A stretch of 64,000 bases of DNA, taken from positions 62,001 through 126,000 of the IMG/VR virus record IMGVR_UViG_3300033145_003233. One strand, written 5' to 3'. Position 1 is the first letter of the stretch, and each line of letters starts with the position of its first letter. This document shows positions 3,493-38,351 of the stretch, piece after piece. The notes beneath the pieces are model-generated. The model was not told where the DNA came from. It searched no databases and worked only from the letters and a program-made list of their open reading frames with translations. The position numbers and the translations under genes were made by a program.

Positions 3493-3564
3493 GTCGTGTT
3501 GGTGTCAATGGTAGCATATCAGCCCGCCACGCTGAAGGTGAGGGTTCAAGTCCCTTACACGACT
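3493..3564 (+). tRNA. tRNA-Gly (GCC)
   Basis: Acceptor GTCGTGT/ACACGAC; anticodon arm TCAGC-CCGCCAC-GCTGA; T arm GAGGG-TTCAAGT-CCCTT; no encoded CCA. Confidence 0.9.
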
Positions 3565-7145: not shown

Positions 7146-7217
7146 TGAGCAGTAGTTCAATGGTAGAACGTCTGGCTCTGAACCAGAAGGTTGTAGGTTC
7201 AAGTCCTACCTGCTCAA
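7146..7217 (+). tRNA. tRNA-Gln (CTG)
   Basis: Acceptor TGAGCAG/CTGCTCA; D arm GTTC/GAAC; anticodon arm TCTGG-CTCTGAA-CCAGA; T arm GTAGG-TTCAAGT-CCTAC. Confidence 0.95.
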
Positions 7218-7313
7218 CTTTAAGAAAGAAAATGGAAAAAGAAAACGACAGTTTAGAATCTGACCCGTATCATCAGCGATGGTGCGGAATAAATTCTAGG
7301 GTAAGAACAGAGA

Positions 7314-13318: not shown

Positions 13319-14206
13319 GTGAACACAGATTGCGCTTTTTACATAGGAACGACACATGAAGTCTGTCACGATTACACCCTATCTGGAAAAGATAAGATAA
13401 TACTATCAGACGGTTGCTCTGGGTCTCGCTTATCAGATATGGGTTCAAGAGTATTAAGCATAACAGCAATAAATAAAATAGCAGAAGTTGACGATCTTCA
13501 TAACTTTGAACCGGGAGAATGCATATTGCTTTCTCGCCCCTCAATAAAAATATTAAATCTACCAAATACCTGTTTAGATGCTACCCTACTAGGAGCAGCT
13601 GGTGAAGAGGATTGCTTGCAAGCATTTTGCTATGGAGACGGGACAATAGCACTAAAAACAAAAAACGGGGACATTGCTATCATTGATATAGTTTATACAG
13701 ATAATCATCCTTTTTATATAAATTATCTTTATGATAAAACTGGCAGATTTACAAATTGGGAACAAAATCATAATAAGAGAAAAGTAACTTTATCTATAAT
13801 AAAGAAGGATGGAGAAATTAAACTTATTAAAGACAATTGTGATTATCCCAACATTGTTAACTCTGTTACTAGAATCCCTATGAATGGAGGAGTAGATATA
13901 GGTTTGGTAACAGTTTCTCCCGACAGAACATTTGTCCAAATAGTTAATGATAAAATTGATGATGAAATTGAATGGATTGCCATTATGTCAGATGGGGTTC
14001 ATAGTTTCTATAAGCCCGCTATAACAGAAACCTCAAAGAAGAATGAGCCTGTACCTTATCTTGAAGTTTTAAAATCTTTGTTGAACTTTAAAAATTATAA
14101 TGGCAAATTTGTTCAAAGAAGAATAAATAGATTTCTAAAAGACTGTAAAAAAGCCGACTGGCATAATGCTGATGATGTTTCTTTAGCTGTAATCCATTGC
14201 GGATAG
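13319..14206 (+). CDS. PP2C-like protein phosphatase
   Basis: CHD, ILSDGCSGS, AIMSDGV and DDVS motifs; GTG start. Confidence 0.8.
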   Translation: MNTDCAFYIGTTHEVCHDYTLSGKDKIILSDGCSGSRLSDMGSRVLSITAINKIAEVDDLHNFEPGECILLSRPSIKILNLPNTCLDATLLGAAGEEDCLQAFCYGDGTIALKTKNGDIAIIDIVYTDNHPFYINYLYDKTGRFTNWEQNHNKRKVTLSIIKKDGEIKLIKDNCDYPNIVNSVTRIPMNGGVDIGLVTVSPDRTFVQIVNDKIDDEIEWIAIMSDGVHSFYKPAITETSKKNEPVPYLEVLKSLLNFKNYNGKFVQRRINRFLKDCKKADWHNADDVSLAVIHCG

Positions 14207-14214
14207 GAAACAAA

Positions 14215-16192: not shown

Positions 16193-16217
16193 ATATAATT
16201 ATTTATGGAAAAATAAT

Positions 16218-18168: not shown

Positions 18169-18531
18169 ATGATCGGGGAGAAAAAAAAGTATCTGATACA
18201 ACTTTTTTTAAAAAGATGTACATTACAAGAAATTAATAGAAAACATATTGATTTCTCATTTGAACTTTTTAAAAATACGTATAATGTCTCGGATGAAGTT
18301 CTGTCCAAATTAAGAAAAAAGTATAATATAGACGAGTATATAGATAGGCTGCTGCCATTAATAGACGAACAATTTACAACTGAAGAATTGCAAGCAATAG
18401 TAAAGTTTTATTCTTCAGATATGGGGAAAAAAATATTAGATCCTATTTTTTTAGAGAAAGTAGGAAAAATAGGTACTAACATGTTTGCTCAAATAGAGCA
18501 AGAATTTTCTATCAACAATAACTTAAAATGA
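18169..18531 (+). CDS. DUF2059-like protein
   Basis: QFTTEELQAIVKFYSSDMGKKIL pattern. Confidence 0.65.
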   Translation: MIGEKKKYLIQLFLKRCTLQEINRKHIDFSFELFKNTYNVSDEVLSKLRKKYNIDEYIDRLLPLIDEQFTTEELQAIVKFYSSDMGKKILDPIFLEKVGKIGTNMFAQIEQEFSINNNLK

Positions 18532-22584: not shown

Positions 22585-23193
22585 ATGGCAAAAGAAAAAT
22601 ATAAATATGAAAAAATATACCAAGGTAAGGGCATCTATAGAAGAAATAGAAAAATAGACAAAACAGGAAAAATAAGAAAAACATATGGTAGAGAAAATTG
22701 CGGCAAAAAACATCTTCAATATATAATCAATGAAATTCAACCAACTTCTATTATAGATGTGGGTTGTGGAAGTAATAAATTCTGTGCTATGTTAAAAAAA
22801 ACTAATATAAAATCAATTGGCATTGATTGCGCCTGCCCTCTTGCAGATGTTATCTCGGATGCTGATAATCTTCCTTTTCACGATAATCAATTTGATTTAT
22901 TAACGGCATTCGATGTACTAGAGCATATACCAGAAGAAGAAATAGATATAGTATTTAAGGAATTTAAAAGAGTAGCTCATCGCTTCATGTATCAAATAGC
23001 CTTAAGAAAATCTCCCTCCTCCATAGATCATGAGACATTACACCCGACAGTTAAACCTTATGACTGGTGGATAGATAAAATTACAAAAGATGATCCAAAA
23101 ATAATTAAGATAATGTATAAACGAAAAAGGTACATAGTCCCGCCAGAAGATGCAAAGAAACTTATTATTTATGGAATATTTGATAAGACATAA
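22585..23193 (+). CDS. Class I SAM-dependent methyltransferase (paralog 1)
   Basis: IIDVGCG, LPFHDNQFDLLTAFDVLEHIP. Confidence 0.85.
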   Translation: MAKEKYKYEKIYQGKGIYRRNRKIDKTGKIRKTYGRENCGKKHLQYIINEIQPTSIIDVGCGSNKFCAMLKKTNIKSIGIDCACPLADVISDADNLPFHDNQFDLLTAFDVLEHIPEEEIDIVFKEFKRVAHRFMYQIALRKSPSSIDHETLHPTVKPYDWWIDKITKDDPKIIKIMYKRKRYIVPPEDAKKLIIYGIFDKT

Positions 23194-24117: not shown

Positions 24118-24759
24118 ATGGCAAAAGAAAAATACAAATACGAAAAAATATATCAGGGCAAAGGTGAATTCAAAAGAATTTATCAGCTAGATGGATCGGG
24201 AAAGAAACGAGAGATGTATGGACATAATAACCACGGTAAACAATATTTTAAGTTTATACTAAGAAAAGTTAAACCCACTTCGGTTGTAGATATAGGTTGT
24301 GGATATAATGAATTTTGTGAGATGCTGAAAGAAAAAGGAATAGAATCAGTAGGTGTTGACTTCGCCTGTCCCGGAGCCGACATAATGGCTAGTGCTGAAA
24401 ACCTTCCTTTTAGAGATGGGCAGTTTGATTTATTAACAGCATTCGATGTATTAGAGCATATACCAGAAGAAGAAATAGATACATCATTAAAAGAATTTGA
24501 GAGAATAGCTCATCGCTTTATGTATAAAATATGTTTAAGAAAAGATTTTAAAAAAATAGATGGAGAAACATTGCACCCCACAGTTAGATTCCCTGAATGG
24601 TGGATAGATAAAATTACAAAAAATGGTGGACATATAGGCCAAATAATATATTCTAATAAAAAAGGAATAATGCCAAAATGCAGGGCTAAAATATTAACCG
24701 TTTATGGATTTTTTCATGTAAAACCACCTCCTCCAAAAAGCAAATCATATTATGATTAA
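24118..24759 (+). CDS. Class I SAM-dependent methyltransferase (paralog 2)
   Basis: VVDIGCG, LPFRDGQFDLLTAFDVLEHIP; same MAKEKYKYEK start. Confidence 0.85.
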   Translation: MAKEKYKYEKIYQGKGEFKRIYQLDGSGKKREMYGHNNHGKQYFKFILRKVKPTSVVDIGCGYNEFCEMLKEKGIESVGVDFACPGADIMASAENLPFRDGQFDLLTAFDVLEHIPEEEIDTSLKEFERIAHRFMYKICLRKDFKKIDGETLHPTVRFPEWWIDKITKNGGHIGQIIYSNKKGIMPKCRAKILTVYGFFHVKPPPPKSKSYYD

Positions 24760-24770
24760 AGAAGAATAAG

Positions 24771-25322
24771 ATGGCAAAAGAAAAATATAAATATGAAAAA
24801 AGAATCAAAGAAATAAAATATTCTGACAAGGATAAAAAAAAGAACCATGGACTAAAAACAATGCCATTCATAAAAAATATTATCAAACCTTCTTCAGTTA
24901 TAGATGTTGGATGTGGGTGGAACTCGTTTTGCCATTTATTAAATGAAAAAGGGATAGAATCAGTTGGTGTTGATTTCGCTTGTCCAGGTGCAGATATTAT
25001 AGCAGATGCCGAATATCTTCCTTTTAAAGATGGGCAATTTGATTTATTAACAACATTTGATGTATTAGAGCATATACCAGAAGAAGAAATAAATATGGTG
25101 TTTCAAGAATTTAAAAGAGTAGCAAATAAATTTTTCTACCAAATATGTCTAGGAAGAGGAAAGAGACATATAACTCTTAAATCTCCCACATGGTGGCTAT
25201 TAAAAATAATAGAAAACCAAGGAGATATTGGACAAATAACATATTATGATGGGGCAAATAACATAGTCCCCAAAAATAAAGCAAGATGGATTACTGTTTA
25301 TGGTTTCTTTAATAAAAATTAA
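24771..25322 (+). CDS. Class I SAM-dependent methyltransferase (paralog 3)
   Basis: VIDVGCG, LPFKDGQFDLLTTFDVLEHIP; same MAKEKYKYEK start. Confidence 0.85.
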   Translation: MAKEKYKYEKRIKEIKYSDKDKKKNHGLKTMPFIKNIIKPSSVIDVGCGWNSFCHLLNEKGIESVGVDFACPGADIIADAEYLPFKDGQFDLLTTFDVLEHIPEEEINMVFQEFKRVANKFFYQICLGRGKRHITLKSPTWWLLKIIENQGDIGQITYYDGANNIVPKNKARWITVYGFFNKN

Positions 25323-25345: not shown

Positions 25346-25374
25346 TTGACAAAACCTACAAAAAGTAGTATAAT
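25346..25374 (+). promoter_or_regulatory. Consensus sigma70 promoter upstream of the radical SAM gene and the MKIR array
   Basis: TTGACA-N17-TATAAT; shares AAAAGTAGTATAAT with the promoter at 4360. Confidence 0.85.
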
Positions 25375-25436
25375 AAACAATTCGAAAGTAGAGATATGGG
25401 GCAGTAGGAATGTAACCGCTTATGACAGAGGAAGTT

Positions 25437-26483
25437 ATGAAAATAATCGATAAAAAAGATAGAAAAGCTCTTTATTCACGGAATTATAATTTTGTTCTAA
25501 ATAAGAAAAATGGGCTTTTTATAAGATAGGGAAGGGCTTTAGGAGATGATCCTCAGTTCTCTCCATTTGGACCTGAAATTTTGGATTTAGAGATTTCCTC
25601 TGGTGGAGATTGTCTCGGAAATTGCCCCTTCTGTTACAAATGTAATGGTGGAGATCAACCTACTCACAATATGACTTTTATAGAGTTTAAGACAATCTTT
25701 GATAAGATGCCTAAAACTCTTACTCAGATTGCTTTTGGGATTATGAATATTAAAACTAATCCCGACTTCTTTAAAATGATGAAGTATGCTAAAAAGAATG
25801 GAGTTATTCCTAATTATACCTGTCATGGTTTGGATGTTACTCCTGAGATGGCAGAAAGAACTTCCAAACTTTGCGGAGCAGTAGCAGTTAGTCTTTTAAA
25901 TAAAAAGAAAACGTATAAGGCTATTAAGCTTTTTACTAGTTTCGGTATGAAGCAAGTTAATATTCATTATATGCTTAGTGAAGAGACTTATGATAAAGCA
26001 TTTGAGATTGTAGATGATTTGGCATCTGATTCTGACTTAAAGGATTTTAATGCTATTGTCTTTTTACAGTATAAATCAAAAGGCAGAAATCCAGATGATT
26101 TTACTTCTGTTCTGGACGTAGAAAAATATAAGAAGCTAACAGAATATTGCAAAGCAAGAAATATTCGCTATGGCTTTGACTCTTGCTCTGCTTCTATGTT
26201 TATAGATAGTTTGGAAGGACAACCTGATAAAAAGGTCACAGAGCTATTTGTAGAGCCTTGTGAGAGTGGATTGTTTAGCTCTTATATAAATTGTCATGGA
26301 AAATTCTTTGTTTGTAGTTTTGCTGAGGACGAAGATGAATGGATAAAAGGATTAGATGTTTTACATTGTGATGATTTTATGAAGGATATTTGGGACCATC
26401 CAAGACTTGTTGCTTGGAGAGAAAGATTGATAAAAAACAAAAGAGAATGTCCGATTTATGATTTATCTTTGGAGAAAGCATAA
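25437..26483 (+). CDS. Radical SAM protein with SPASM/twitch-like C-terminus; in-frame TAG at codon 31
   Basis: CLGNCPFC (CxxxCxxC), CESGLFSSYINCHG...VCSF, RECP; ATG at 25437 with GAGG SD is in frame, TAG at 25527-25529. Confidence 0.85.
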
Positions 26484-26764
26484 TGCAAGAATGGATTAAA
26501 TTTGTTTGTCAGAATTGCGAGCAGGGAGTGAAAACACCTGTAGAAAATGCGGGCAAAAAAGGAAGATGTCATCAATGCAAGACAGAATGCATTATCCCAG
26601 AAAGAGAAACAGAAGAAGAGAGAGAAGAGGCATTTATTTCTGATCTCTTTAAAGATCTTGACGAAATTGATAAACAAGCAGAAATAGAATCAAACTCTTT
26701 AGCTAAAATTTTAAAAAATCAAGAAGCAATGAGTGGATCAATGGATTTGGACGATCCAATATAA
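26483..26764 (+). CDS. Zn-ribbon hypothetical protein
   Basis: CQNC...CHQC. Confidence 0.65.
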   Translation: MQEWIKFVCQNCEQGVKTPVENAGKKGRCHQCKTECIIPERETEEEREEAFISDLFKDLDEIDKQAEIESNSLAKILKNQEAMSGSMDLDDPI

Positions 26765-26789
26765 GTTTAAAAAATTATTGGATATATAA

Positions 26790-27182
26790 ATGAAAATTAG
26801 AACAGGATTTGTTAGTAATAGTAGTGTCAGTTCTTTCACTATCTATGGATGGACAGAAAAAGATCTGTCCGAACATCTTGCAAGTTTATGTTCCTCTTTT
26901 AAAAATGTGGATGTCAGTATAGATGAGAGCTTTATAGAATCTCTTGATGAAATTTGGGAAGGTAATAAGTGGGATCTTAATTCTACATATGGCCCTGATG
27001 GAAGAATGGTTTTTGGACTTGGCACTCATGATAGTGAGGTAGATCATAGTGGATATGATTATACAGGCGAAAACTTTAAATTTCCAGAACCATCATATAA
27101 AGATCAAAAGAAATTTGACGAATTGGCTAAAAAACTAAAATTACCTCAACCCAAAATGCATCAAGCAACATGGTATGATTAA
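26790..27182 (+). CDS. MKIRxGFVSNSS-family protein 1
   Basis: Starts MKIRTGFVSNSSVSSF. Confidence 0.8.
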   Translation: MKIRTGFVSNSSVSSFTIYGWTEKDLSEHLASLCSSFKNVDVSIDESFIESLDEIWEGNKWDLNSTYGPDGRMVFGLGTHDSEVDHSGYDYTGENFKFPEPSYKDQKKFDELAKKLKLPQPKMHQATWYD

Positions 27183-27194
27183 TAGGAACTAGAT

Positions 27195-27791
27195 ATGAAA
27201 ATTAGAACAGGCTTTGTTAGTAATAGTTCAAGTGCTTCTTTTGCCATACCGTCTATTCTCCTTACAGACGAGCAAAAAGAAATGCTGCTTAGCATAGATG
27301 ATATGAAAGAAGAAAAAGCAGGATTGCAAGAAAAATTTGGAGATGATCATAATTGGGAAACCTCAAAAAATGATTATCCTGTTAATGAAGAATATCATAG
27401 AATTTATCAGAAAATGCTCGATGATAATAGATGGGACGATAGTTGGTCAATAGGAGAACATAAAGAAGATCAACTAGTCTCAGGAAGCACAATGATGGAA
27501 AATGGTAGTTTGAGAGTATTGATGGAACATATCGGAATAGATATAGAAATAGTTGAAGCCCATGAGCAACTCTCTACTCGCTTGGCAACTCATCCTGAAG
27601 CAGTAAAATATTTTATAGAACTGAATAAAAAATATAGAAAGAAATTCGAAGACCTGGACAAAAAGCAACAAGAGATACAATCAGAATTTCTTGGAGGCGC
27701 TCCTCTTGAAAGAGGCCCTTATGAAATGAGTGACAAAGAATTAGAAGAAAATGAACTACCATATTATAGAAGGGGAAAAGATGAAAATTAG
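27195..27791 (+). CDS. MKIRxGFVSNSS-family protein 2
   Basis: Starts MKIRTGFVSNSSSASF. Confidence 0.8.
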   Translation: MKIRTGFVSNSSSASFAIPSILLTDEQKEMLLSIDDMKEEKAGLQEKFGDDHNWETSKNDYPVNEEYHRIYQKMLDDNRWDDSWSIGEHKEDQLVSGSTMMENGSLRVLMEHIGIDIEIVEAHEQLSTRLATHPEAVKYFIELNKKYRKKFEDLDKKQQEIQSEFLGGAPLERGPYEMSDKELEENELPYYRRGKDEN

Positions 27792-28224
27792 AATAGGATT
27801 TGTAAGCAACAGTAGCACTAGCAGTTTTGTATTAGCTGGTTTTAATTTAGGTCAAGAGAAAGTTTTGTATGAACAGATCTATACCAGCATTACCGGCAAA
27901 ACCGAAGAATACATTACTACCAAGATGAAAGAATCAAAAGGTTATAAAGATGACTCAGACGATCCAGAATATAGAGAAGAATATGTTAGAGAATACCTAT
28001 GGAATGAAATCCAACCTGAGATTGCTATTCAGTCTGGTAGCGAATCCGGAGTTGGAGACAAAACAGTTGTTGGTAGGATGCTAGTATGGTCGGGTTCAGA
28101 TGGAGACTACTGGGACAATATAGAAGTAGATATGGACAAACTATCAAAAGAATTAGAACCCTTAAGACAAATACTTGGGACAGATTCGGAATTGAAGTTG
28201 TTTATCGGTTCTGCATGTTGTTAA
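27781..28224 (+). CDS. MKIRxGFVSNSS-family protein 3
   Basis: Starts MKIRIGFVSNSSTSSF at ATG 27781. Confidence 0.8.
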   Translation: MKIRIGFVSNSSTSSFVLAGFNLGQEKVLYEQIYTSITGKTEEYITTKMKESKGYKDDSDDPEYREEYVREYLWNEIQPEIAIQSGSESGVGDKTVVGRMLVWSGSDGDYWDNIEVDMDKLSKELEPLRQILGTDSELKLFIGSACC

Positions 28225-28234
28225 GGAATGTAAT

Positions 28235-28792
28235 ATGAAAATTAGAACAGGATTTGTGAGCAATAGTTCAACACAGAGCTTCGTGTGTCCTCTTTGCGAT
28301 GATCTCTATCTTCTTATGGACGGAGATCCAGAGACTAACACCTATGCTTTATGTATTTGTAAGAACCATCATGCTTTCTGTCAAGTTCATATTCCCTTCT
28401 CTGTAGAAGAAATTACAAAAGTAATGAAAGAAGAATTAAAAAAGAATCCGCCGGATGCCGTAATTCCTTCACATATTAAAAAAAAGATTGATAAACTTTC
28501 TCTTAGAGAATTAAAAGAATTATTTGATAGGAAGAATGAGGATAAAAAAACAGCGATGGAAATGAATGATTTTATTCATTACTTCTTCCGCAATCTTCCT
28601 ACAAAATTATGTCCCATCTGCACTTTTAAACGCATTCTGCCATGTGATGTTAAAGATTATTTCTTTATAACTGCTGAAATGGACACGGTTTTAAACAATA
28701 TACAAAAAACATTTGGAACTTATAAAAAGTTTCAAAAATTTCTTGATACAAATAGAAATCAAAATTTAGACTGGGACGAAAATGAAGATTAG
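28235..28792 (+). CDS. MKIRxGFVSNSS-family protein 4 (Cys/His Zn-binding)
   Basis: Starts MKIRTGFVSNSSTQSF; CPLC, CKNHHAFC, CPIC. Confidence 0.8.
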   Translation: MKIRTGFVSNSSTQSFVCPLCDDLYLLMDGDPETNTYALCICKNHHAFCQVHIPFSVEEITKVMKEELKKNPPDAVIPSHIKKKIDKLSLRELKELFDRKNEDKKTAMEMNDFIHYFFRNLPTKLCPICTFKRILPCDVKDYFFITAEMDTVLNNIQKTFGTYKKFQKFLDTNRNQNLDWDENED

Positions 28793-29186
28793 AAAAGGTT
28801 TTGTAAGTAATAGTAGCACTTCAAGCTTTATTGTGGGAATCCCTAAAGACTTATCAGAAGAAGAAAAAAAGATCTTCCTAATAAATAAAATGGGAGGAGA
28901 AAAAAGTATATTCTCAGAAATGTTTGAGCCAATAGCAAACCTCATTCTAGGAGGAGATATTGGAGAAGAACGTATTCTTGAATACTGGGGAGAGGATTCT
29001 CTTGAAGGATTGAAAGAGAATTGTTCCGATATGTATGATATAATAATGAAATGTAGAGAAAAAGGTCTGGAAATTCATATGGGAAGTGCTGATGACCAAA
29101 GCTCAGATAGGTCAGAAATATCATTTTGTGGAATGACTATCTATGTAGATGAAGATGATTTCTTTTTTGATAAAGAAGGAAGATAA
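28782..29186 (+). CDS. MKIRxGFVSNSS-family protein 5
   Basis: Starts MKIRKGFVSNSSTSSF. Confidence 0.8.
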   Translation: MKIRKGFVSNSSTSSFIVGIPKDLSEEEKKIFLINKMGGEKSIFSEMFEPIANLILGGDIGEERILEYWGEDSLEGLKENCSDMYDIIMKCREKGLEIHMGSADDQSSDRSEISFCGMTIYVDEDDFFFDKEGR

Positions 29187-29716
29187 TGAAAATCAGAAAT
29201 GGATTTATTTCTAATAGTTCAGCTAGTTCTTTTATCGTTCAAACGAAAAAAGATAAATTTGATATGATTATGGAGAAAGAAATAGGAACTCTTGATCAAG
29301 AACAGGTGAAACTCTTAAAAGAAAACGGTTTTGCTCCGACTACAACAAGCGATCCATTTTCTTTTTTAGAACTTAATAGAAGATCTTGGCCCGATAGTAA
29401 AGGTCAAGAAGAGGATATAGACAATGATGTTTATATGGCCCTTATGGTAGCTTGTAATCAGGATGAAATAATATATCTTTTAGTCAAAAATAATATTCCA
29501 TTTAAAGCAGCTTGTCATTATGGACAAGAGTTTATATGCTATGAAAAAGATTCAGATTATATGTTTAAAGCCAATAATTTTGGCATGGAGGCTTGTATGT
29601 ACGGGGCCGAACATGTCGAAGAAGACAGGTTCAATTCTCCCAAATTCGAGAGAATAGATGTTAAAGGATGGATGGAAAAAGAAGAACCAGTGTTGGAGAA
29701 TGAAGATGAAGATTAG
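29186..29716 (+). CDS. MKIRxGFVSNSS-family protein 6
   Basis: Starts MKIRNGFISNSSASSF. Confidence 0.8.
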   Translation: MKIRNGFISNSSASSFIVQTKKDKFDMIMEKEIGTLDQEQVKLLKENGFAPTTTSDPFSFLELNRRSWPDSKGQEEDIDNDVYMALMVACNQDEIIYLLVKNNIPFKAACHYGQEFICYEKDSDYMFKANNFGMEACMYGAEHVEEDRFNSPKFERIDVKGWMEKEEPVLENEDED

Positions 29717-30260
29717 AAATGGATTTGTAAGCAATAGCTCAAGTAGCTCTTTTGTTATAGCCTTTCCGAGCAAACCGAAATCAATAGAAGATGTTAAAAA
29801 AATGATATTCGGACAACAAGAGTGGCATTATTCGGGATATATAGGAAGAGATGAGAGTGACGTTCCAACTCTACCTATTGCAGAGAATGTTTTTTCCAAA
29901 ATAGAAAAGAAAGCAACTAAAAAAGAAATCTTAGAATCAATTAAACATGGATGGTTTGGCCCATATTATGATTCTCTTGAACATCTTCCTGGATATAAAA
30001 GCAGAGATATAGGTGATCAAAAAGAACTTCAAGCATTAAAACATGGTTCTCCTGAGTGGCATAAGCTTTATGATAAAATTGCTAAAGTCGAAGATGAAGA
30101 AAATGAGAAAAGAGCCAACGATATCGTTGAGGCATTTATGTTAATGAATCACAAAAGCTATTTTGTGGTTATGGATTTTTCTGATAATGATGGAGAAGCA
30201 ATAGAAGAACATACAGAGATCTTCGGAAGACTTCCACATATTAGAACAAGTTATCACTAA
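29706..30260 (+). CDS. MKIRxGFVSNSS-family protein 7
   Basis: Starts MKIRNGFVSNSSSSSF at ATG 29706. Confidence 0.8.
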   Translation: MKIRNGFVSNSSSSSFVIAFPSKPKSIEDVKKMIFGQQEWHYSGYIGRDESDVPTLPIAENVFSKIEKKATKKEILESIKHGWFGPYYDSLEHLPGYKSRDIGDQKELQALKHGSPEWHKLYDKIAKVEDEENEKRANDIVEAFMLMNHKSYFVVMDFSDNDGEAIEEHTEIFGRLPHIRTSYH

Positions 30261-30268
30261 GGAATATT

Positions 30269-30610
30269 ATGAAAATCAGAACAGGATTTATAAGTAATAG
30301 TAGTAGCTCTAGCTTTCTATGTAGGGGAAATTTTACGCCAGAAGAAGCAAAAGATATTTTACAAGAGACATTGGATTTTTACAATAAAATGTGCGGCACT
30401 GACAAGACTTTTGGAAGTGTTTTTGAAGAACCTAGATTAGGAACCAAAGCTGATTTTAAATTTTATTCTGAAGATTGGGAAATTGGAGTTATTGAAGAAG
30501 AAGTTGTTGGACATCTTATTATAAATGGTTGTGATGATAACTCTATTCCTTACGAATTATTTTATTTAATAGAGCGCAAATTTGACGCTCAAAGGTTTCA
30601 TTTAGGATAA
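30269..30610 (+). CDS. MKIRxGFVSNSS-family protein 8
   Basis: Starts MKIRTGFISNSSSSSF. Confidence 0.8.
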   Translation: MKIRTGFISNSSSSSFLCRGNFTPEEAKDILQETLDFYNKMCGTDKTFGSVFEEPRLGTKADFKFYSEDWEIGVIEEEVVGHLIINGCDDNSIPYELFYLIERKFDAQRFHLG

Positions 30611-30624
30611 GAGGGAGACAAATT

Positions 30625-31014
30625 ATGAAAATAAGAACAGGATTTATAAGCAATAGTAGTAGTTCTTCTTTTGTCGTGCTGGGAGAATGGGTGGCTAGGT
30701 GGAGAGCAAAAGAAGAATTTGCAAATGGAAATAAAAAAATTTACGCTATTGGGGATTCCCTTGGAGATGGAGACGACATTATCCATGTAACCCCCAAACT
30801 AGCCAAATACTTATTCTCCGAATCTCCTGATTTTGATTTTGGAGATATGCAGTTTCTTATAGCTATCGTAGCGGCCAGTGGAGAAGGAACATTTAATACA
30901 TCAGATATTGACCCTACTAAAAATATAGAATTAACCGTAGTCTCTCTGGAAAAGGATATGCATTCCTGCCAGACAAAAGCAGATTTATTAGATATTTATG
31001 GAATAGAAAAATGA
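30625..31014 (+). CDS. MKIRxGFVSNSS-family protein 9
   Basis: Starts MKIRTGFISNSSSSSF. Confidence 0.8.
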   Translation: MKIRTGFISNSSSSSFVVLGEWVARWRAKEEFANGNKKIYAIGDSLGDGDDIIHVTPKLAKYLFSESPDFDFGDMQFLIAIVAASGEGTFNTSDIDPTKNIELTVVSLEKDMHSCQTKADLLDIYGIEK

Positions 31015-31373
31015 AAATCAAAAGAGGTTTTGTAAGTAACAGTTCGACAACATCGTTTATGGCATACGGAATATGCGCAGATAGTAATGAAATTATGGAA
31101 GCCCTTAAAGAAACAGGAACAATTACCGATGGAGAAGATTTTGAATGTATCTCAGACTGGACATGGGATAATCGTAAGGTTCTTGAAGATATGGAAATCG
31201 ATTGTTGGCTTCCTCCGTATGACGATACTTGTTATATGGGAGTTAGTTATAACTGTCTTAAAGATGATGAAACTGGTAAGCAATTCAAGGACAGAGTTAC
31301 AGCAGAAATGAAAAAATTATTAGGGGATAAATTTGATTTCTCCATTATCGAAGATGGATGGAGAGACGGATAA
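31011..31373 (+). CDS. MKIRxGFVSNSS-family protein 10
   Basis: Starts MKIKRGFVSNSSTTSF. Confidence 0.8.
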   Translation: MKIKRGFVSNSSTTSFMAYGICADSNEIMEALKETGTITDGEDFECISDWTWDNRKVLEDMEIDCWLPPYDDTCYMGVSYNCLKDDETGKQFKDRVTAEMKKLLGDKFDFSIIEDGWRDG

Positions 31374-31387
31374 GAAAGAGGTAAGCA

Positions 31388-31786
31388 ATGAAAATTAGAA
31401 TAGGTTTTGTAAGCAATAGCTCAAGCACATCTTATGTGCTAGCTGTAACAAGAAATTTCAAGCTCACGGACGAAAAGAGAAAAGAACTATTTGAAGAGCA
31501 TGTCGATTGGAGCGGCGAAGAAGATATAACAATAGACCAAATAGATGGATACTTTCAGGACATCATTGAACGACTATGCTCTAGTGGAGAAGTATATGAA
31601 GATGATGATGAGCCTCCTCTATTTTACCCCTTTATTACCGTATTTGAAGATGAGATACTCTTCACAACAATAGAGGCAGGTCCAGGGCAAGGAGTCCATA
31701 TCAATCTTCTATCTGACAAGGAAATAGAAAAAACTCTTAAGAAAATGAAAAAAATAATCTCTGAGAATGATGAAACATCATCATAG
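31388..31786 (+). CDS. MKIRxGFVSNSS-family protein 11
   Basis: Starts MKIRIGFVSNSSSTSY. Confidence 0.8.
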   Translation: MKIRIGFVSNSSSTSYVLAVTRNFKLTDEKRKELFEEHVDWSGEEDITIDQIDGYFQDIIERLCSSGEVYEDDDEPPLFYPFITVFEDEILFTTIEAGPGQGVHINLLSDKEIEKTLKKMKKIISENDETSS

Positions 31787-31849
31787 ATTTTCTCAATATT
31801 TTCTTGAAAAGTGATTGTATCTATAATATAATCTTTGAAAGGATTTCCT

Positions 31850-32512
31850 ATGACAAAACAAAGAATCTTATTATTTGGCGGCACATTTAACCCTATCCAT
31901 GTGGGACATCTCCTAATGGCCCAGGAAGCCGTAGAACGTCTCAATTTCGATAAAGTCATTTTTATACCCTCTGCTATCCCCCCCTTCAAGAAAAGCCCTG
32001 TATCGTTCTCTCAGAGGCTCAAAATGGTCACTATGGCTATCGATGGTATAGACTATTTCGAAGTTTCAGATATAGAGGCAAAAAGGGGTGGTCCAAGCTA
32101 TACAATCGATACTGTCAGATATTTCAAAGAAAAATGCCAGAACTGGGCAAAAATCTATTGGATGATAGGTTCTGACTGTGTTAAAGAGTTAACAAAATGG
32201 CATAAAATAAGAGAACTTCTTGATGAATGCATATTTGTGATAGCCGAAAGAAATCAATATAGAAATTATGAGGGGGGAGATTTTATGTCGTTTGTTTATG
32301 AAACCCTGAAAGAAATAGCAGATATAAATCAACCTATCATGACAAATCATTTTACCCCTCTTATTAATAGGGTATTAGAAATTTCCTCAAGTGATATCCG
32401 AGATAGATTAAGATGTGATGAATCAATCAGGTTTTTAGTTCCTGAAGCAATAGAACAATATATAAAAGATAATGAACTCTATTCAAATAACAGACAACAT
32501 ATCGCTGTATAA
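31850..32512 (+). CDS. nadD: Nicotinate-nucleotide adenylyltransferase
   Basis: ILLFGGTFNPIHVGHL, SYTIDT, WMIGSD, ISSSDIR. Confidence 0.92.
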   Translation: MTKQRILLFGGTFNPIHVGHLLMAQEAVERLNFDKVIFIPSAIPPFKKSPVSFSQRLKMVTMAIDGIDYFEVSDIEAKRGGPSYTIDTVRYFKEKCQNWAKIYWMIGSDCVKELTKWHKIRELLDECIFVIAERNQYRNYEGGDFMSFVYETLKEIADINQPIMTNHFTPLINRVLEISSSDIRDRLRCDESIRFLVPEAIEQYIKDNELYSNNRQHIAV

Positions 32513-33296
32513 CGGAGAAGCGGAGAAAGTTATTCCCATTTTAGAAGATGATAGCATTGACTTGACTATCACTTCTCCACCCTATAATGTAAAATTAGGG
32601 GATAACAAGTTTAATAAGAATCCCTACGACTTATACAACGACAATAAAGATCATAAAAAATACATAAAGTGGTTAAAAGATATCTTCTCTAGACTCTACC
32701 CCAAATTAAAATCAGGAGGAAGAGTCTGTATTAATATTGGAGATGGGAAAAATGGAGCAATTCCAACCCATGTGGATATTATCCACTTTATGACAAGAGA
32801 ATTAAAATACATTCCTATGGCTAATATTATATGGAACAAAAGCCAGATAGGGAATAGATTTTCATGGGGGAGCTATATGTCTCCTAGTTGTCCTTCTTTT
32901 CCCAAACCATTTGAATATATAATGGTTTTTGCTAAAGAAACTACAAAATTACAGACAAAAGGAGAGACAGATCTAGTTCCTAAACAATTTATAGAATGGG
33001 CATTTTCTATATGGAATTTTGCCCCTGAAACAAAGATGAAAAAAATAGGCCATCCAGCAATGTATCCTGTTATACTTCCCTATAGATTAATAAAAATGTT
33101 GAGTTGGACAAATGCTACAATTCTTGATATTTTTAATGGAGCAGGGACTACAGGTGTTGCTTGTGAGCAGTTAGGTAGAAAGTATATTGGAATAGAAATG
33201 TCTAAAAAATATTGTGATATAACAGAGAAAAGAATAAAAGATACAAGACCATTAAGCGAAATAAATATGTTTCCGGGAGAAGAAAAATGGATATAG
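32472..33296 (+). CDS. DNA methyltransferase (N4-C/N6-A, beta class)
   Basis: ITSPPYN catalytic motif precedes HPAMYP and DIFNGAGTT (SAM-binding). Confidence 0.9.
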   Translation: MNSIQITDNISLYNGEAEKVIPILEDDSIDLTITSPPYNVKLGDNKFNKNPYDLYNDNKDHKKYIKWLKDIFSRLYPKLKSGGRVCINIGDGKNGAIPTHVDIIHFMTRELKYIPMANIIWNKSQIGNRFSWGSYMSPSCPSFPKPFEYIMVFAKETTKLQTKGETDLVPKQFIEWAFSIWNFAPETKMKKIGHPAMYPVILPYRLIKMLSWTNATILDIFNGAGTTGVACEQLGRKYIGIEMSKKYCDITEKRIKDTRPLSEINMFPGEEKWI

Positions 33297-33514: not shown

Positions 33515-35164
33515 ATGTTAGAACAAAATGTAGTGAACAGTTCACAGGAGCCTTCATTTAAGTATGGTAAGGTTTCAATTCAACCATCACCAATGTTGAT
33601 AGATTCCATTCGTTATTCAGGTCATAATTATAAAACAGCTATAAAAGACATTGTTGATAATAGTCTTGACGCTGGGGCAAGTGAAATTTTTATTTTGATA
33701 GGGAAAGAAGATAAAAAATCAAGAATAGTCATTGCAGATAATGGAAGCGGGATGTCCCCCGCCACTTTGCAGAAAGCTTTTTCTCTGGGCTGCTCTATTA
33801 AAAATGGAGGTACAGATCAAAAGTTGGGTAGATTTGGAATGGGTTTAAAAACTGCTTCAGGATGCTTAGGCAATGAGTTAGTTGTTTTAACAAAAAGTGA
33901 AGGAAAAAGCCTTATTAGAGGAGAGCATTTTTTCAAGAAGATAGAGAAAGAAGGATGGTTCGCTAATATCTCAGTCGCTAATGATGATGATAATGAATAT
34001 TTCAATAATATTTTTAAAAGTAGCAAAAAGGGGACAATAATTATAATTCAAGATCTTCGTATTTCAGATAATATCTATCAACTTAAGGAACCTATGTTAA
34101 AAGAAATTGGAAGAACATATAGATATTTTCTTGCTCCAAAATTAAAAAAAGATCAATCTCCGGCACCGATAGGAAAGATAAAAATGTATTTTGGATCTTC
34201 TGTTTCAAATTGTAAACCCGTATATGGTCTAGATCCTTTAGAGCGTCAGCATAAGGATACAAAGATTGTGTTAGAAGAGGATGTAAAATTAGATAATGGT
34301 CGTAGTTTTAAAGTAAGCATATCTATATTGAACAGAACGTCTCTAGATTGTGACCTTAATTTTAAACCTACTTTAATAAATCAGGGAGTTTATATAGTTA
34401 GAGAAAATAGGGAGATACAAGCGCATACTGCTAAACATAGACTTTTTGGAGGAAAAGTGAAAGATCCTCATATGAATTACATCAGAATGGAAATAAGGTA
34501 TTCTAATATGGACGATGTATTTGAATTAAATAACACTAAAACGAGCATTGAAACAATTGATCAACCTATCGCTGATAAAATCGAGACACTAACAAGTTCT
34601 TATATTAGCCAGTGGGCTAAGGATTGTAAAAAAGCTTCCAGTGTTGACTCTACAAAGGGGCTAGATAAAATTCTTTTAAAAGCTCAAGAAGAGGTTGAGG
34701 GCAAAAAGAATATTTTAGAATTGCCATCGGCTGCGAAAGGTAAAAAAAGACCAGGCACAACGGATAAAAAAGGAACAGTAAAAGGTACAGGAGAAGGATC
34801 TCATCACTCTAATAAAGAACCTAAAGAACCTAAAGATTATAGCAATAAACCTAAAGATTATGAATTTAAAGAGAGAGATATGTCAGAAGCTGGCCCTATC
34901 TTTGAATATGGAGGTCTTGATAATGGGGTAATAGAGATTACATGGAATGTTGCTCATCCTTATTTTTGTAAATTTATTGCTGGTAATATTGATAAAGATT
35001 CTAATGATAGTTTACTTTTATCATTACAATACATGGCATTCGCTATGACATCTTCATTTATGATTTTTTGTCAGAGGGCTAATATGGAATATGAAGATGC
35101 TCAGGTTCTTACCGAAAATATGATGGGAACAATTTCTAATAATCTAAGAGCCTTGTCAAGATAA
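33515..35164 (+). CDS. GHKL (HATPase_c_3, MORC-like) ATPase
   Basis: DIVDNSLDA, IADNGSGM, GRFGMGLKTAS, KGT motifs. Confidence 0.85.
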   Translation: MLEQNVVNSSQEPSFKYGKVSIQPSPMLIDSIRYSGHNYKTAIKDIVDNSLDAGASEIFILIGKEDKKSRIVIADNGSGMSPATLQKAFSLGCSIKNGGTDQKLGRFGMGLKTASGCLGNELVVLTKSEGKSLIRGEHFFKKIEKEGWFANISVANDDDNEYFNNIFKSSKKGTIIIIQDLRISDNIYQLKEPMLKEIGRTYRYFLAPKLKKDQSPAPIGKIKMYFGSSVSNCKPVYGLDPLERQHKDTKIVLEEDVKLDNGRSFKVSISILNRTSLDCDLNFKPTLINQGVYIVRENREIQAHTAKHRLFGGKVKDPHMNYIRMEIRYSNMDDVFELNNTKTSIETIDQPIADKIETLTSSYISQWAKDCKKASSVDSTKGLDKILLKAQEEVEGKKNILELPSAAKGKKRPGTTDKKGTVKGTGEGSHHSNKEPKEPKDYSNKPKDYEFKERDMSEAGPIFEYGGLDNGVIEITWNVAHPYFCKFIAGNIDKDSNDSLLLSLQYMAFAMTSSFMIFCQRANMEYEDAQVLTENMMGTISNNLRALSR

Positions 35165-35947: not shown

Positions 35948-36090
35948 TTTTTTCTCTCTAAATAATAGTCTATTATTTTTCTAGTCATTTCAGAAAAAGT
36001 TATTTCTCTATTTTCTGCTTCTTTATAAATTGCTTTGTGTTGTTTTTCTGTTATATACATTTCTGTTCTTCTCATTTTCTTTTTTGACAT
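35944..36090 (-). CDS. Small ribbon-helix-helix (CopG-like) protein, not in the ORF track
   Basis: MSKKKMRRTEMYITEKQHKAIYKEAENREITFSEMTRKIIDYYLERKK; AGGAG SD; stop overlaps the HNH start. Confidence 0.65.
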   Translation of the reverse strand: MSKKKMRRTEMYITEKQHKAIYKEAENREITFSEMTRKIIDYYLERKK

Positions 36091-36233
36091 TTTTATTTCT
36101 CCTATATATTATATACGGTGTTATAACTGATACTCCTCTTTTTATCGGAAATTATTAAAAACTTCTTTAAAAGTGAATGAATAAGTTGTATAATAAGAAA
36201 TAGATTATATAATTAAATTAAGGAGAGCAAGGT

Positions 36234-37268
36234 ATGAATATAGTATTAATCATTCCCACAGGGATAGGATGTGAAATAGGAGGCAATTGCGGAGATGCCA
36301 ATCCAGTAGCTAAATTAATTGGGAAATGTTGTGACAATCTTATTCTACATCCAAATGTAGTTAATGCTTCAGATGTAAATGAAATGCCTGAGAATACATG
36401 GTACGTAGAAGGAAGTCATCTAGATGAGTTTTTAGAAGGAAATTTATTTTTAGAAAGAGTTCATCAGAATAGAGTTTTAATAGCAGTAAATAAAGCAGAT
36501 TGGCAATCTATAAATGCAGTTTCTGCTGCTAGAGCAACAATAGGATCTAATGCAGAAATTATTGAATTAGAGACTCCTCTGGAATTAATTGCTCAAATAA
36601 AAAATAAAGTAGCCACAGGAAAAGTTAATGGATGGGCAAGACTAGTGGAGCAATTAGCTCCATATGAATACGATGCCTTAGGAATAGCCACTCCTATTAC
36701 AATTTCCGAAGAAATGTTAAGACATTATTTTAAAGTGGGAGGAGTAAATCCTGTTGGTGGAGTAGAGGCTGTTGCTACTAGATTAATAGGAAGTGCCATT
36801 GGAAAGCCCGTAGCTCATGGACCAGTAGACTACGCAATACCTGGATTTGAAGAGATAGTAGATCCTCGAAAAGCTGTTGAAGTAGTTACGTTAAATTTTA
36901 TTCATTGCTTATTAAAGGGCCTTAATAAAGCCCCTAAACTTATCTTCCGTCCATTTGAACATAAGTTCGATAATAAAAGTAATAAAAGTCTAGGAGTGGA
37001 AGATGTAGATTTTATGATAAGCCCTCATGGATGCTGGGGCCGGCCTCATAAAGCTTGCAGAGAAAAGGGTATTCCTATTATTATAGTAAAAGAAAACACA
37101 TCTGTTCTTAATGATGGCTATCCTTCTGGAACTGATTTGATTTTTGTAGAAAACTATCTTGAAGCAGCTGGATATATTCAATCTATCAAAGCAGGAGTTA
37201 ACCCTTCTTCTGTAATAAGGCCATTAACGAGTACTATAGTGTGGTCTTCTAAGAACCAACAGCCTTAA
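36234..37268 (+). CDS. DUF3326 family protein
   Basis: IIPTGIGCEIGGNCGDANP, LILHPNVVNASD, NYLEAAG. Confidence 0.8.
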   Translation: MNIVLIIPTGIGCEIGGNCGDANPVAKLIGKCCDNLILHPNVVNASDVNEMPENTWYVEGSHLDEFLEGNLFLERVHQNRVLIAVNKADWQSINAVSAARATIGSNAEIIELETPLELIAQIKNKVATGKVNGWARLVEQLAPYEYDALGIATPITISEEMLRHYFKVGGVNPVGGVEAVATRLIGSAIGKPVAHGPVDYAIPGFEEIVDPRKAVEVVTLNFIHCLLKGLNKAPKLIFRPFEHKFDNKSNKSLGVEDVDFMISPHGCWGRPHKACREKGIPIIIVKENTSVLNDGYPSGTDLIFVENYLEAAGYIQSIKAGVNPSSVIRPLTSTIVWSSKNQQP

Positions 37269-37575
37269 ATTTTCCAACAGGACAAGTGAGTTTAAGATTC
37301 TGAGAAATAGCAACGAGAGAAAGTCCTTTTTTAATTTTGTGGCATATCCTTATTCTGGACTTTTCTTCTAATCTAGTTTGTATTGAGTGTGAACATTTGC
37401 TACATATAGCACGTCTTTGAGCTTGTATCCCCAGCTTTAGTTGCTCTGCTTTCATGACTTTACCATTTTTTACTAATCTTTTTGCTTTCAGCTTTCTTGC
37501 TTTCCGCATAGCTTTATTCTTAGCTTTATCTCTAGCTATTCTATTTTTTCTAGCTTTTCCACAACCGCAGCCCAT
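37249..37575 (-). CDS. Basic Cys-containing hypothetical protein
   Basis: MGCGCGK start, CSKC and CPVGK; GGGAG SD. Confidence 0.6.
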   Translation of the reverse strand: MGCGCGKARKNRIARDKAKNKAMRKARKLKAKRLVKNGKVMKAEQLKLGIQAQRRAICSKCSHSIQTRLEEKSRIRICHKIKKGLSLVAISQNLKLTCPVGKFKAVGS

Positions 37576-37641
37576 ATAGTTCTCCCTTTTATTATTGGTA
37601 ATAATTAATCGAAAACCTTTATAGATCTCGATAAATATATT

Positions 37642-37971
37642 ATGGATAAATACGAAAACATGAGAAAAATTATAAAAGAAGAAAATAATGATGTCTTATT
37701 TTTAGCACATGAGTTTAATGAGGCCCTTATGGGCAGTTGTCTTATTGAAACAAATAAAGCTGTGGCTGTTTATGATACTGATATTTATATAAGAATATTA
37801 ATAAAGAATCTTGAAATAGAAGAGCTAGAGGCATTGAAAAAGTTAGAAGATTGTATTCTCTATTATTATGGCTACCCAAATCATCCGGTATTTATTAATG
37901 ATTTTAGACGAATAAAAATGGTTAATCTTGAACATTTAGAACCAACAGATACAATAGAAGATCTATCTTAA
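37642..37971 (+). CDS. Hypothetical protein
   Basis: 109 aa ORF. Confidence 0.6.
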   Translation: MDKYENMRKIIKEENNDVLFLAHEFNEALMGSCLIETNKAVAVYDTDIYIRILIKNLEIEELEALKKLEDCILYYYGYPNHPVFINDFRRIKMVNLEHLEPTDTIEDLS

Positions 37972-38351
37972 GAAGCGCAAACAGGCCACTCTGATATATC
38001 ATATCCTATATCTTCAGATATGTAGGACCAGTTAATGGGAATGCAACCTTCATCCCATGAAACTCCATTAATAAATACTGCAAGGTCTCCATAAGTTCTC
38101 TCAGTAAAAACATTTATTGCTTTTATAATCCTTTTTCTTTCTCCGTCTATATCCCAGTTATCTAATGCCCATCTATGAAATCTATCCATTTTACCAAGTA
38201 AAGCAAGTTCAGCGGCGAGTCCATCATCAGAGCTATCTATATCCACAATGGTTAAAAGAGCATTATAGATGTAGCCCACAGCCCCCGGTTTATCTGTAAC
38301 GGTAGCTTCTATGTCTAAAACGAGTGATTTATAAGTCTCTTCCCATGCCAT
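37968..38351 (-). CDS. Hypothetical protein
   Basis: 127 aa ORF. Confidence 0.6.
   Translation of the reverse strand: MAWEETYKSLVLDIEATVTDKPGAVGYIYNALLTIVDIDSSDDGLAAELALLGKMDRFHRWALDNWDIDGERKRIIKAINVFTERTYGDLAVFINGVSWDEGCIPINWSYISEDIGYDISEWPVCAS

What the first reader, a model, noticed from the sequence alone, without database searches (positions are those of the whole stretch)
25346..31786. Radical SAM/SPASM enzyme heading an array of 11 genes that share only a 16-aa N-terminal MKIRxGF(V/I)SNSSxxSF peptide
Seen: a consensus sigma70 promoter, a radical SAM gene (CxxxCxxC plus twitch-like C-terminal cysteines), a Zn-ribbon gene, then 11 tightly packed or overlapping ORFs (113-198 aa) that all begin MKI(R/K)xGF(V/I)SNSSxxS(F/Y) and diverge afterwards. 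The Ser codons in the motif mix AGY and TCN, so conservation acts on the peptide rather than reflecting recent DNA duplication. Established: SPASM/twitch radical SAM enzymes commonly modify peptides or proteins at short motifs (anSME oxidises Ser/Cys to formylglycine; RiPP maturases act on leader-bearing substrates). Inference: one phage maturase may install a modification or cofactor on the invariant SNSS motif of a diversified protein family. Alternatives are a self-processing Ser-rich motif or a shared N-terminal beta-hairpin that docks many variable subunits on one partner. This is the best candidate in the window for an uncharacterised system.
Basis: partly seen in the sequence, partly recalled or inferred. 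Interest (0 to 1): 0.88.

Follow-up and report, generated by a model that had tools for sequence, protein, structure and literature searches.

The report
Phage radical-SAM enzyme with tagged protein array
A huge phage carries one iron-sulfur "radical SAM" enzyme gene followed by 11 otherwise unrelated small proteins that share an almost invariant 16-residue N-terminal tag. This enzyme-plus-tag pairing recurs in many phages, including lab E. coli phages, has no known function, and can be tested directly.

Summary
A perfect sigma70-like promoter (25346-25374) precedes a twitch/SPASM-type radical SAM gene (25437-26483), a zinc-ribbon ORF and 11 same-strand ORFs of 113-198 aa. All 11 begin MKI(R/K)xGF(V/I)SNSSxxS(F/Y), and Ser codons mix AGY and TCN.

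The radical SAM gene here has an in-frame TAG exactly where homologues have a conserved Trp. The window shows no sign of TAG recoding.

- Starting from the tag, 38 of 50 non-redundant IMG/VR loci with full flanks hold this radical SAM family within 10 kb, always on the same strand.
- Starting from the enzyme, 67 of 72 loci hold tag genes.
- No other window gene tracks the array.
- Cultured T4-like phages (RB43, RB16, Lw1, KP15) carry both, about 20 kb apart.

The tag family is very large: 23,590 clusters at 50% identity, none with a Pfam match among those scanned. The protein bodies show no profile similarity to each other and are mostly acidic.

AlphaFold puts tag residues 13-20 in a core strand and leaves residues 1-12 at low confidence.

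The likeliest reading is one enzyme acting on many tagged proteins. No modification has been shown.

The parts
25346..25374 (+). sigma70-type promoter-like site, TTGACA-17-TATAAT, 12 of 12 matches
   Evidence: It lies in the 114-nt gap upstream of the radical SAM gene.
25437..26483 (+). Radical SAM enzyme gene of the twitch/SPASM type (phrog_7293 family), interrupted by an in-frame TAG at 25527-25529
   Evidence: Translation. CxxxCxxC plus four further family-invariant Cys. phrog_7293 at E 4.7e-74. The pieces before and after the stop align to residues 1-30 and 32-370 of the intact homologue L002. Residue 31 is Trp in 42 of 46 homologues.
26483..26764 (+). Small zinc-ribbon-like ORF (CxxC...CxxC) with an acidic tail; not a conserved part of the module
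   Evidence: No homologue in any of the 86 related loci.
26790..27182 (+). tag protein 1, 130 aa, pI 4.9
27195..27791 (+). tag protein 2, 198 aa, pI 4.8; its body subfamily is present in 27 loci
27781..28224 (+). tag protein 3, 147 aa counted from the MKIR start, which has a Shine-Dalgarno-like GGGG upstream
28235..28792 (+). tag protein 4, 185 aa, 8 Cys in zinc-binding-like motifs; its body subfamily is present in 17 loci
28782..29186 (+). tag protein 5, 134 aa
29186..29716 (+). tag protein 6, 176 aa; its body subfamily is present in 12 loci
29706..30260 (+). tag protein 7, 184 aa. It belongs to the most widespread body subfamily (phrog_7397, Lw1 gp116), with invariant D160, E168, H169 and C-terminal H184
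30269..30610 (+). tag protein 8, 113 aa
30625..31014 (+). tag protein 9, 129 aa
31011..31373 (+). tag protein 10, 120 aa; its body subfamily is present in 15 loci; modelled with AlphaFold
31388..31786 (+). tag protein 11, 132 aa
31804..31832 (+). Second promoter-like site (11 of 12 matches), marking the start of the next unit (NMNAT-like gene and DNA methylase)

Best explanation
The stretch is one early-type operon of a roughly 548-kb phage. It encodes a module that is widespread in large phages: one twitch/SPASM radical SAM enzyme plus a variable set (1-14) of small, mostly acidic proteins. These proteins have unrelated bodies but carry the same 16-residue N-terminal tag.

Proposed mechanism (inferred, not shown): the exposed first ~12 residues of the tag (MKIRxGFVSNSS) are the recognition element, and probably the modification site, of the radical SAM enzyme. 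One enzyme would then mature many different proteins. This is the logic of one RiPP maturase serving many leader-bearing substrates, applied to folded proteins. Tag residues 13-18 anchor the tag as the first core strand of each body.

The matured proteins are most likely diverse early effectors for host takeover or counter-defence (inferred).

In this genome the enzyme gene carries a nonsense codon at a conserved Trp. Here the module may be freshly inactivated, may reflect an assembly or population variant, or may make only a truncated enzyme.
For: Shown:
- Tag-anchored IMG/VR scan: 51 of 79 non-redundant loci, and 38 of 50 with full 10-kb flanks, hold the enzyme. The median gap is 499 bp, the strand is the same in 51 of 51, and the enzyme lies upstream of all tag genes in 34 of 51.
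- Enzyme-anchored scan: 67 of 72 loci hold canonical tag genes. Two more hold variant tags.
- An independent sample gave 6 of 6.
- No other window gene co-occurs with the array.
- Two tag loci that lacked the enzyme within 10 kb have it further along the same contig.
- Cultured T4-like phages: enzyme in 174 records, tag protein in 175, with matching host genera. In Lw1 both lie on the same strand in the early region.
- Across 313 unique proteins, tag residues 1, 2, 4, 6-12, 15 and 16 are at least 95% conserved, while bodies fall into 96 BLAST clusters with hhalign probability at most 8.6%.
- Tag variants are genome-wide: a G6S+S9G swap in all 4 paralogues of L106, F7H in all 4 of L129, F7L in both of L179. 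Within-locus identity at variable positions 3 and 5 exceeds 500 of 500 shuffles. This fits one shared partner per genome.
- AlphaFold gives residues 1-10 a pLDDT of about 50 and puts residues 13-20 in a confident core strand, in two different subfamilies.
- The enzyme has one auxiliary-cluster Cys set. Its nearest solved relatives are BtrN and SkfB.
Against: - No chemistry was observed, so the direction of the relationship (substrate, adaptor or regulator) is not established.
- The enzyme gene in this window is interrupted while all 11 tag genes are intact, so the tag proteins may not strictly need it.
- In T4-like phages the genes are not adjacent.
- No RiPP recognition domain, protease or exporter is found.
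- Half of the tag is a buried structural strand in the models.
- Genome-wide tag variants could also arise by gene conversion between the near-identical 5' ends.
- Co-variation with enzyme residues is a single-lineage lead only.
Confidence: 0.5

Rival explanations
1. Docking-handle model. The tag is not modified. It plugs each protein into the radical SAM enzyme, and the variable bodies act as interchangeable specificity or regulatory subunits that bring different host targets (proteins, nucleic acids or metabolites) to one catalytic subunit. This is the logic of F-box adaptors.
For: The co-occurrence and genome-wide tag variants fit this model equally well. The bodies are diverse, folded and conserved as subfamilies across phages. 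The enzyme has a strongly conserved ~50-residue N-terminal extension of unknown role.
Against: No precedent is known to me for a radical SAM enzyme with swappable protein adaptors. The Ser/Asn-rich invariant stretch looks more like a reaction site than a simple docking strand. The enzyme gene is broken here while the array is intact.
Confidence: 0.2
2. Sorting-signal model. The tag is a targeting, assembly or turnover signal read by some other machinery, for example packaging into the capsid for injection, in the way T4 internal proteins share an N-terminal capsid-targeting sequence. The radical SAM gene is linked only by shared regulation or by an unrelated role.
For: The arrangement is an array of unrelated small proteins sharing only a short N-terminal peptide in a variable early region. 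The tag proteins are intact here although the enzyme gene is broken. They are acidic, inhibitor-like proteins.
Against: The radical SAM gene is the only gene that follows the array across about 70 divergent loci, usually within 0.5 kb and always on the same strand. No Glu-containing protease site of the T4 type follows the tag.
Confidence: 0.15
3. Single divergent fold family. All tag proteins are fast-evolving homologues of one minimal alpha/beta scaffold. The tag forms its first strand plus an active-site or ligand-binding loop, possibly self-processing at a Ser. They work in the same pathway as the radical SAM enzyme without being its substrates.
For: Two subfamilies give the same strand-helix-insert-strand-acidic loop-helix-C-terminal strand layout. 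A hydrophobic-small-acidic-Gly motif at 70-90% of the protein length is enriched, in 24% of proteins against 9.6% in shuffles. The protein-7 subfamily has invariant D, E-H and H residues.
Against: Profile-profile comparison finds no body homology. The second motif is absent from most proteins. Foldseek finds no related fold in the PDB or BFVD. Residues 1-10 are not confidently packed in the models.
Confidence: 0.12

Closest known systems
One-maturase, many-substrates RiPP systems (for example the prochlorosin lanthipeptide system, from my own knowledge) and SPASM/twitch peptide maturases such as SkfB
   Same: One enzyme gene sits beside many genes that share a conserved N-terminal recognition sequence and diverge afterwards. 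The enzyme is of the twitch/SPASM radical SAM type.
   Different: The partners are 80-280 aa proteins with confidently predicted folds, not short peptides. The conserved part is only 16 residues and almost invariant. No RRE domain, leader protease or exporter is present. The whole system is phage-borne.
Twitch/SPASM dehydrogenases: BtrN, and anaerobic sulfatase-maturing enzyme acting on Ser/Cys of sulfatases
   Same: The C-terminal auxiliary-cluster region matches BtrN (E 4.5e-5). The candidate target is a hydroxyl-rich Ser stretch near the N-terminus of a protein. Oxidation of Ser is known chemistry for this group (established knowledge).
   Different: The tag has no (C/S)xPxR motif. No sulfatase domain occurs in any body. 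Sequence similarity to these enzymes is marginal.
T4 internal-protein locus with a shared N-terminal capsid-targeting sequence (from my own knowledge)
   Same: A hypervariable phage locus of unrelated small proteins that share only a short N-terminal peptide.
   Different: The tag sequence is unrelated, no protease-site consensus follows it, and it is tightly linked to a radical SAM enzyme. Virion location was not tested.

Membership tests
Radical SAM superfamily | CxxxCxxC motif for the SAM-binding [4Fe-4S] cluster | tested here: met
   The window reads CLGNCPFC. The three Cys are invariant in the 33-sequence alignment and near-invariant (45-46 of 46) in the larger one.
Radical SAM superfamily | Pfam PF04055 score above the gathering cut-off | tested here: inconclusive
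   The window piece scores 20.4 bits against a cut-off of 29.5. Many homologues carry a precomputed PF04055 hit. phrog_7293 matches at E 4.7e-74.
Radical SAM superfamily | Intact reading frame in this window | tested here: not met
   In-frame TAG at 25527-25529, at the position of a conserved Trp. No sign of TAG recoding.
SPASM/twitch subgroup | C-terminal Cys set for auxiliary Fe-S cluster(s) | tested here: met
   Four further invariant Cys (C250, C299, C317, C362 in L002 numbering), all present in the window. This is enough for one cluster, as in twitch enzymes, not the full seven-Cys SPASM set.
SPASM/twitch subgroup | Pfam PF13186 score above the cut-off | tested here: inconclusive
   26.3 and 24.5 bits (cut-off 21.5) in the Lw1 and Maroon homologues, 17.3 in L002, and no hit for the window piece. 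A PDB profile search hits the BtrN twitch region.
RiPP biosynthetic cluster | Short precursor peptides with a leader and a core | tested here: not met
   Partners have a median length of 133 aa (range up to 279) and confidently folded bodies.
RiPP biosynthetic cluster | RRE/PqqD-like recognition domain, leader protease, exporter | tested here: not met
   No such Pfam hit in three intact enzymes. No other gene is conserved beside the array.
RiPP biosynthetic cluster | Several substrates sharing a conserved recognition sequence beside one maturase | tested here: met
   1-14 tag genes per locus next to one enzyme gene.
Anaerobic sulfatase-maturing enzyme with sulfatase | (C/S)xPxR target motif and a sulfatase domain in the substrate | tested here: not met
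   The tag consensus lacks the motif. None of 96 body representatives hits Pfam.
Glycyl-radical enzyme with activase | Activase family signature, and a Gly-radical motif in the correct register near the C-terminus | tested here: not met
   No activase NCBIfam hit. The tag Gly is N-terminal. From my memory of the signature, its spacing to the Arg differs; this was not tested with a model.
T4-type internal proteins (capsid-targeting tag) | Tag followed by a prohead-protease site, with the protein packaged in virions | not testable with these tools
   No Glu follows the tag consensus. Virion content is unknown.

The most novel reading that the evidence does not exclude
A previously unrecognised, very large phage system in which one radical SAM enzyme writes a post-translational mark on a universal 16-residue N-terminal tag carried by dozens of unrelated early effector proteins. 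This would be a protein-level tag-and-mature mechanism that controls the activity, stability or targeting of a phage's host-takeover or counter-defence arsenal. Over 23,000 tag-protein clusters would await functions.
Probability: 0.3. Interest if true: 0.92.

Novelty: new variant of a known kind. Interest (0 to 1): 0.8.

Why it matters
The tag family is very large. It comprises 23,590 clusters at 50% identity in a 1.84-billion-protein library. None of the 96 body representatives matches Pfam, and full-text searches found no paper on the motif.

Its only constant partner is an uncharacterised radical SAM family with at least 3,216 clusters.

If the enzyme modifies the tag, this would be a new kind of radical SAM protein modification. 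It would also explain a large block of unannotated genes in huge and T4-like phages.

The module is present in cultured E. coli phages (RB43, RB16, Lw1), so the question can be put to experiment directly.

Tried and rejected
- **Database searches on the tag proteins:** Pfam, NCBIfam and PHROGs gave only phrog_7397 (unknown function) through the tag itself, plus noise hits to AcrIIA4 and darobactin below cut-offs.
- **Phage collection searches:** blastn of the region and tblastn of protein 7 found nothing. The low-complexity filter probably masks the tag.
- **Structure searches:** Foldseek of both models against the PDB, and of one against BFVD, gave no hit at E <= 0.001.
- **TAG recoding to explain the stop:** rejected. 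Code 11 covers 92.5% of the window, TAG ends 25 of 108 ORFs, in-frame TAG junctions are not enriched, and there is no suppressor tRNA in the window.
- **Neighbouring genes as partners:** glycosyltransferases, kinase/PP2C, methyltransferases and the zinc-ribbon gene do not follow the array in other loci.
- **Co-variation of enzyme residues with tag variants:** only single-lineage oddities, such as Q97S in the F7H lineage. The overall deviation counts are not unusual.
- **Rosetta-stone search:** ten longer tag proteins have no Pfam domain.
- **Distant enzyme relative:** a radical SAM relative at 31% identity in LR756500.1 has no tag genes within 12 kb. The link therefore holds for the subfamily at about 37% identity and above.
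Full report
**What is in the window.**

On the + strand, a 12/12 sigma70 consensus site (25346-25374) sits in a 114-nt gap. It is followed by these genes:
- a radical SAM gene (ATG at 25437, stop at 26483)
- an overlapping zinc-ribbon-like ORF (26483-26764)
- 11 tightly packed ORFs, with tag starts at 26790, 27195, 27781, 28235, 28782, 29186, 29706, 30269, 30625, 31011 and 31388, ending at 31786

A second promoter-like site (11/12) at 31804-31832 opens the next unit, an NMNAT-like nucleotidyltransferase and an N6/N4 DNA methylase.

All 11 proteins begin MKI(R/K)xGF(V/I)SNSSxxS(F/Y), and their alignment shows nothing conserved after residue 16. Codons vary synonymously, with AGY/TCN exchange at Ser 9, 12, 14 and 15. 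Selection therefore acts on the peptide. The tag occurs nowhere else in the window.

**The enzyme gene is interrupted.**

There is an in-frame TAG at 25527-25529. I searched the pieces separately. The 30 residues before the stop align to residues 1-30 of an intact syntenic homologue (L002). The piece after the stop aligns to residues 32-370 at 68% identity. The missing residue 31 is Trp in 42 of 46 homologues.

Recoding does not explain the stop:
- the standard code covers 92.5% of the window
- TAG terminates 25 of 108 long ORFs
- in-frame TAG junctions are not enriched
- only ordinary tRNA-Gly and tRNA-Gln genes are present

The rest of the frame keeps every conserved residue. The stop is therefore recent, polymorphic or an assembly error, and intact copies exist in related phages.

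**What the enzyme is.**

Across 33-46 homologues, the CxxxCxxC cysteines and four more cysteines are invariant or nearly so. Four extra cysteines are enough for one auxiliary cluster. The Pfam SPASM model passes its cut-off in the Lw1 and Maroon homologues. A profile search of the PDB finds the twitch region of BtrN (E 4.5e-5) and SkfB (E 9.5e-5).

The enzyme is phrog_7293, 'unknown function'. Sources name it only generically. [quoted passage not shown] A ~50-residue N-terminal extension is strongly conserved, and the TAG falls inside it.

**The link between enzyme and tag.**

The window comes from a 547,943-bp IMG/VR contig.

- **Starting from the tag.** The pattern GFVSNSSS gave 466 stretches, of which 77 loci were kept. 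After removing near-duplicates, 51 of 79 loci hold the enzyme family at 37-62% identity, as do 38 of 50 loci with full 10-kb flanks. The median gap is 499 bp. The enzyme is on the same strand as every tag gene in 51 of 51 loci, and upstream of all of them in 34.
- **Starting from the enzyme.** Of 72 non-redundant loci, 67 hold canonical tag genes (median 4, maximum 11), on the same strand in 66 of 67. Two more loci hold variant tags. Six further enzyme-anchored contigs from other archives all have tag genes next door.
- **Loci that seemed to lack the enzyme.** Two tag loci without the enzyme within 10 kb carry it further along the same contig.
- **Other genes.** No other gene of the window tracks the array. 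This includes the zinc-ribbon gene, the methyltransferases, the glycosyltransferase-like genes, the kinase and PP2C.
- **Cultured phages.** The enzyme occurs in 174 records and the protein-7 subfamily in 175, with matching host genera: Klebsiella, Enterobacter, Cronobacter, Citrobacter and Escherichia, including RB43, RB16, Lw1 and KP15. In Lw1 the enzyme (gp161) and two tag proteins (gp116, gp111) lie about 20 kb apart on the same strand, in the early region with tk and rI. These cultured phages form one related group, so they count as few independent events.
- **Limit of the link.** A more distant enzyme relative (31% identity) has no tag genes nearby.
- **Cellular genomes.** A scan of GTDB genomes found the tag only on MAG contigs with the same arrays, and on a T4-like contig inside a bacterial assembly.

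**The tag proteins.**

In 313 unique proteins, residues M1, K2, R4, G6, F7, V8, S9, N10, S11, S12, S15 and F16 are at least 95% conserved. The tag starts at residue 1. My search pattern fixed part of the motif, but K2 and R4 were unconstrained.

A profile of the first 36 residues finds 23,590 representative proteins at E <= 0.001 in a 1.84-billion-protein library. The tag is at the N-terminus in nearly all of the top 150.

After residue 20, the bodies fall into 96 BLAST clusters. Profile-profile comparison of the 12 largest clusters gives at most 8.6% probability of homology. None of the 96 representatives hits Pfam. PHROGs gives only phrog_7397 and one 'head-tail adaptor' hit, for Lw1 gp111.

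Several subfamilies are conserved across many phages. The subfamilies of proteins 7, 2, 4, 10 and 6 occur in 46, 27, 17, 15 and 12 loci. The proteins are acidic, with median pI 4.7 and median net charge -9.

**Structure.**

AlphaFold models of the protein-7 subfamily (pLDDT 89) and the protein-10 subfamily (pLDDT 78) share one layout:
- tag residues 13-20 form a confident core strand
- a helix follows, then a variable insert
- next come a second strand ending in an acidic loop, a helix and a C-terminal strand
- residues 1-10 have a pLDDT of about 50 in both models

Foldseek finds no related fold. A hydrophobic-small-acidic-Gly motif near 70-90% of the length is enriched, but it is present in only 24% of proteins.

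The tag is thus half anchor and half exposed peptide. A shared minimal scaffold cannot be excluded.

**One partner per genome.**

Some genomes carry the same tag variant in every paralogue:
- a G6S+S9G swap in all four proteins of L106
- F7H in all four proteins of L129
- F7L in both proteins of L179

At the variable positions 3 and 5, within-locus identity exceeds all 500 shuffles. This fits co-adaptation to one common partner. Gene conversion between the similar 5' ends would give the same picture.

The enzyme of the F7H lineage is the only one of 98 with Q97 replaced. That is a single lineage, and overall deviation counts are unremarkable. It is a lead, not a result.

**Interpretation.**

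That the enzyme and the tag proteins form one functional module is well supported (I put it near 0.85).

How they interact is inferred. I favour the tag as the enzyme's recognition and modification site, giving one enzyme and many tagged proteins (0.5). The rivals are:
- a docking handle for interchangeable adaptor subunits (0.2)
- a sorting or packaging signal read by other machinery (0.15)
- one very divergent fold family with the tag as its active-site strand (0.12)

The chemistry is unknown. Oxidation of a Ser hydroxyl would fit the BtrN/anSME-like group, and a cross-link involving F7, S9 or N10 is also conceivable. Both are leads from general knowledge, not tests.

The module fails the RiPP definition on precursor size, recognition domain, protease and exporter. 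It also fails the sulfatase-maturase definition on target motif.

**Novelty.**

Full-text searches for the motif and for this enzyme in these phages found no description. I rate it a new variant of a known kind (maturase plus tagged substrates), with a real chance of something categorically new. It is directly testable in E. coli phages.

Noticed in passing
L106:11082-12627; L129:9496-12230; L179:8918-9940: Whole-genome tag variants. All four paralogues of L106 read MKIRxSF(V/I)GNSS (Gly6 and Ser9 swapped). All four of L129 have His at position 7, and both of L179 have Leu at position 7. The enzyme of the His7 lineage is the only one of 98 with Q97 replaced.
   Followed up: partly
window 22585-23193, 24118-24759, 24771-25322: Three paralogous class-I SAM methyltransferase genes lie just upstream of the operon. 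Two of them open with the same MAKEKYKYEK peptide. They are shared with only two related loci.
   Followed up: partly
window 13319-17930: A PP2C-like phosphatase, an FtsH-like AAA/M41 protease and a Ser/Thr-kinase-like gene lie in a row. The kinase and PP2C recur in a few close relatives only.
   Followed up: partly
window 31835-33296: An NMNAT/NadD-like nucleotidyltransferase and an N6/N4 DNA methylase directly follow the array here and in L002, L104 and L108; an NMNAT-like gene also lies next to the enzyme in L109. Lw1 has an NMNAT/NUDIX gene between its tag genes and its enzyme. This may mark a counter-defence or NAD-salvage region.
   Followed up: partly
L102:4092-4559 (Lw1 gp111): The body of this T4-like tag protein matches phrog_132, 'head-tail adaptor' (E 3.5e-8). 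It is the only body with any named PHROG hit. It has no Pfam hit.
   Followed up: no
L108:11943-13169: An IS605 OrfB/TnpB-type gene lies between the enzyme gene and the first tag genes in a related contig.
   Followed up: no
window 33515-35164: A GHKL/HSP90-like ATPase (HATPase_c_3) gene of 549 aa lies downstream of the methylase.
   Followed up: no
window ~36000-38000: Cumulative GC skew peaks here, and the coding strand switches from mostly + to mostly -. This could be a replication or transcription divergence point.
   Followed up: no
window 8837-10918; 3493-3564; 7146-7218: An NAD-dependent DNA ligase gene, plus tRNA-Gly(GCC) and tRNA-Gln(CTG) genes. There is no suppressor tRNA in the window.
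   Followed up: partly
window 18169-18531: A DUF2059 gene upstream recurs next to the module in several relatives (L002, L006, L013-L015, L104, L108), but not broadly.
   Followed up: partly
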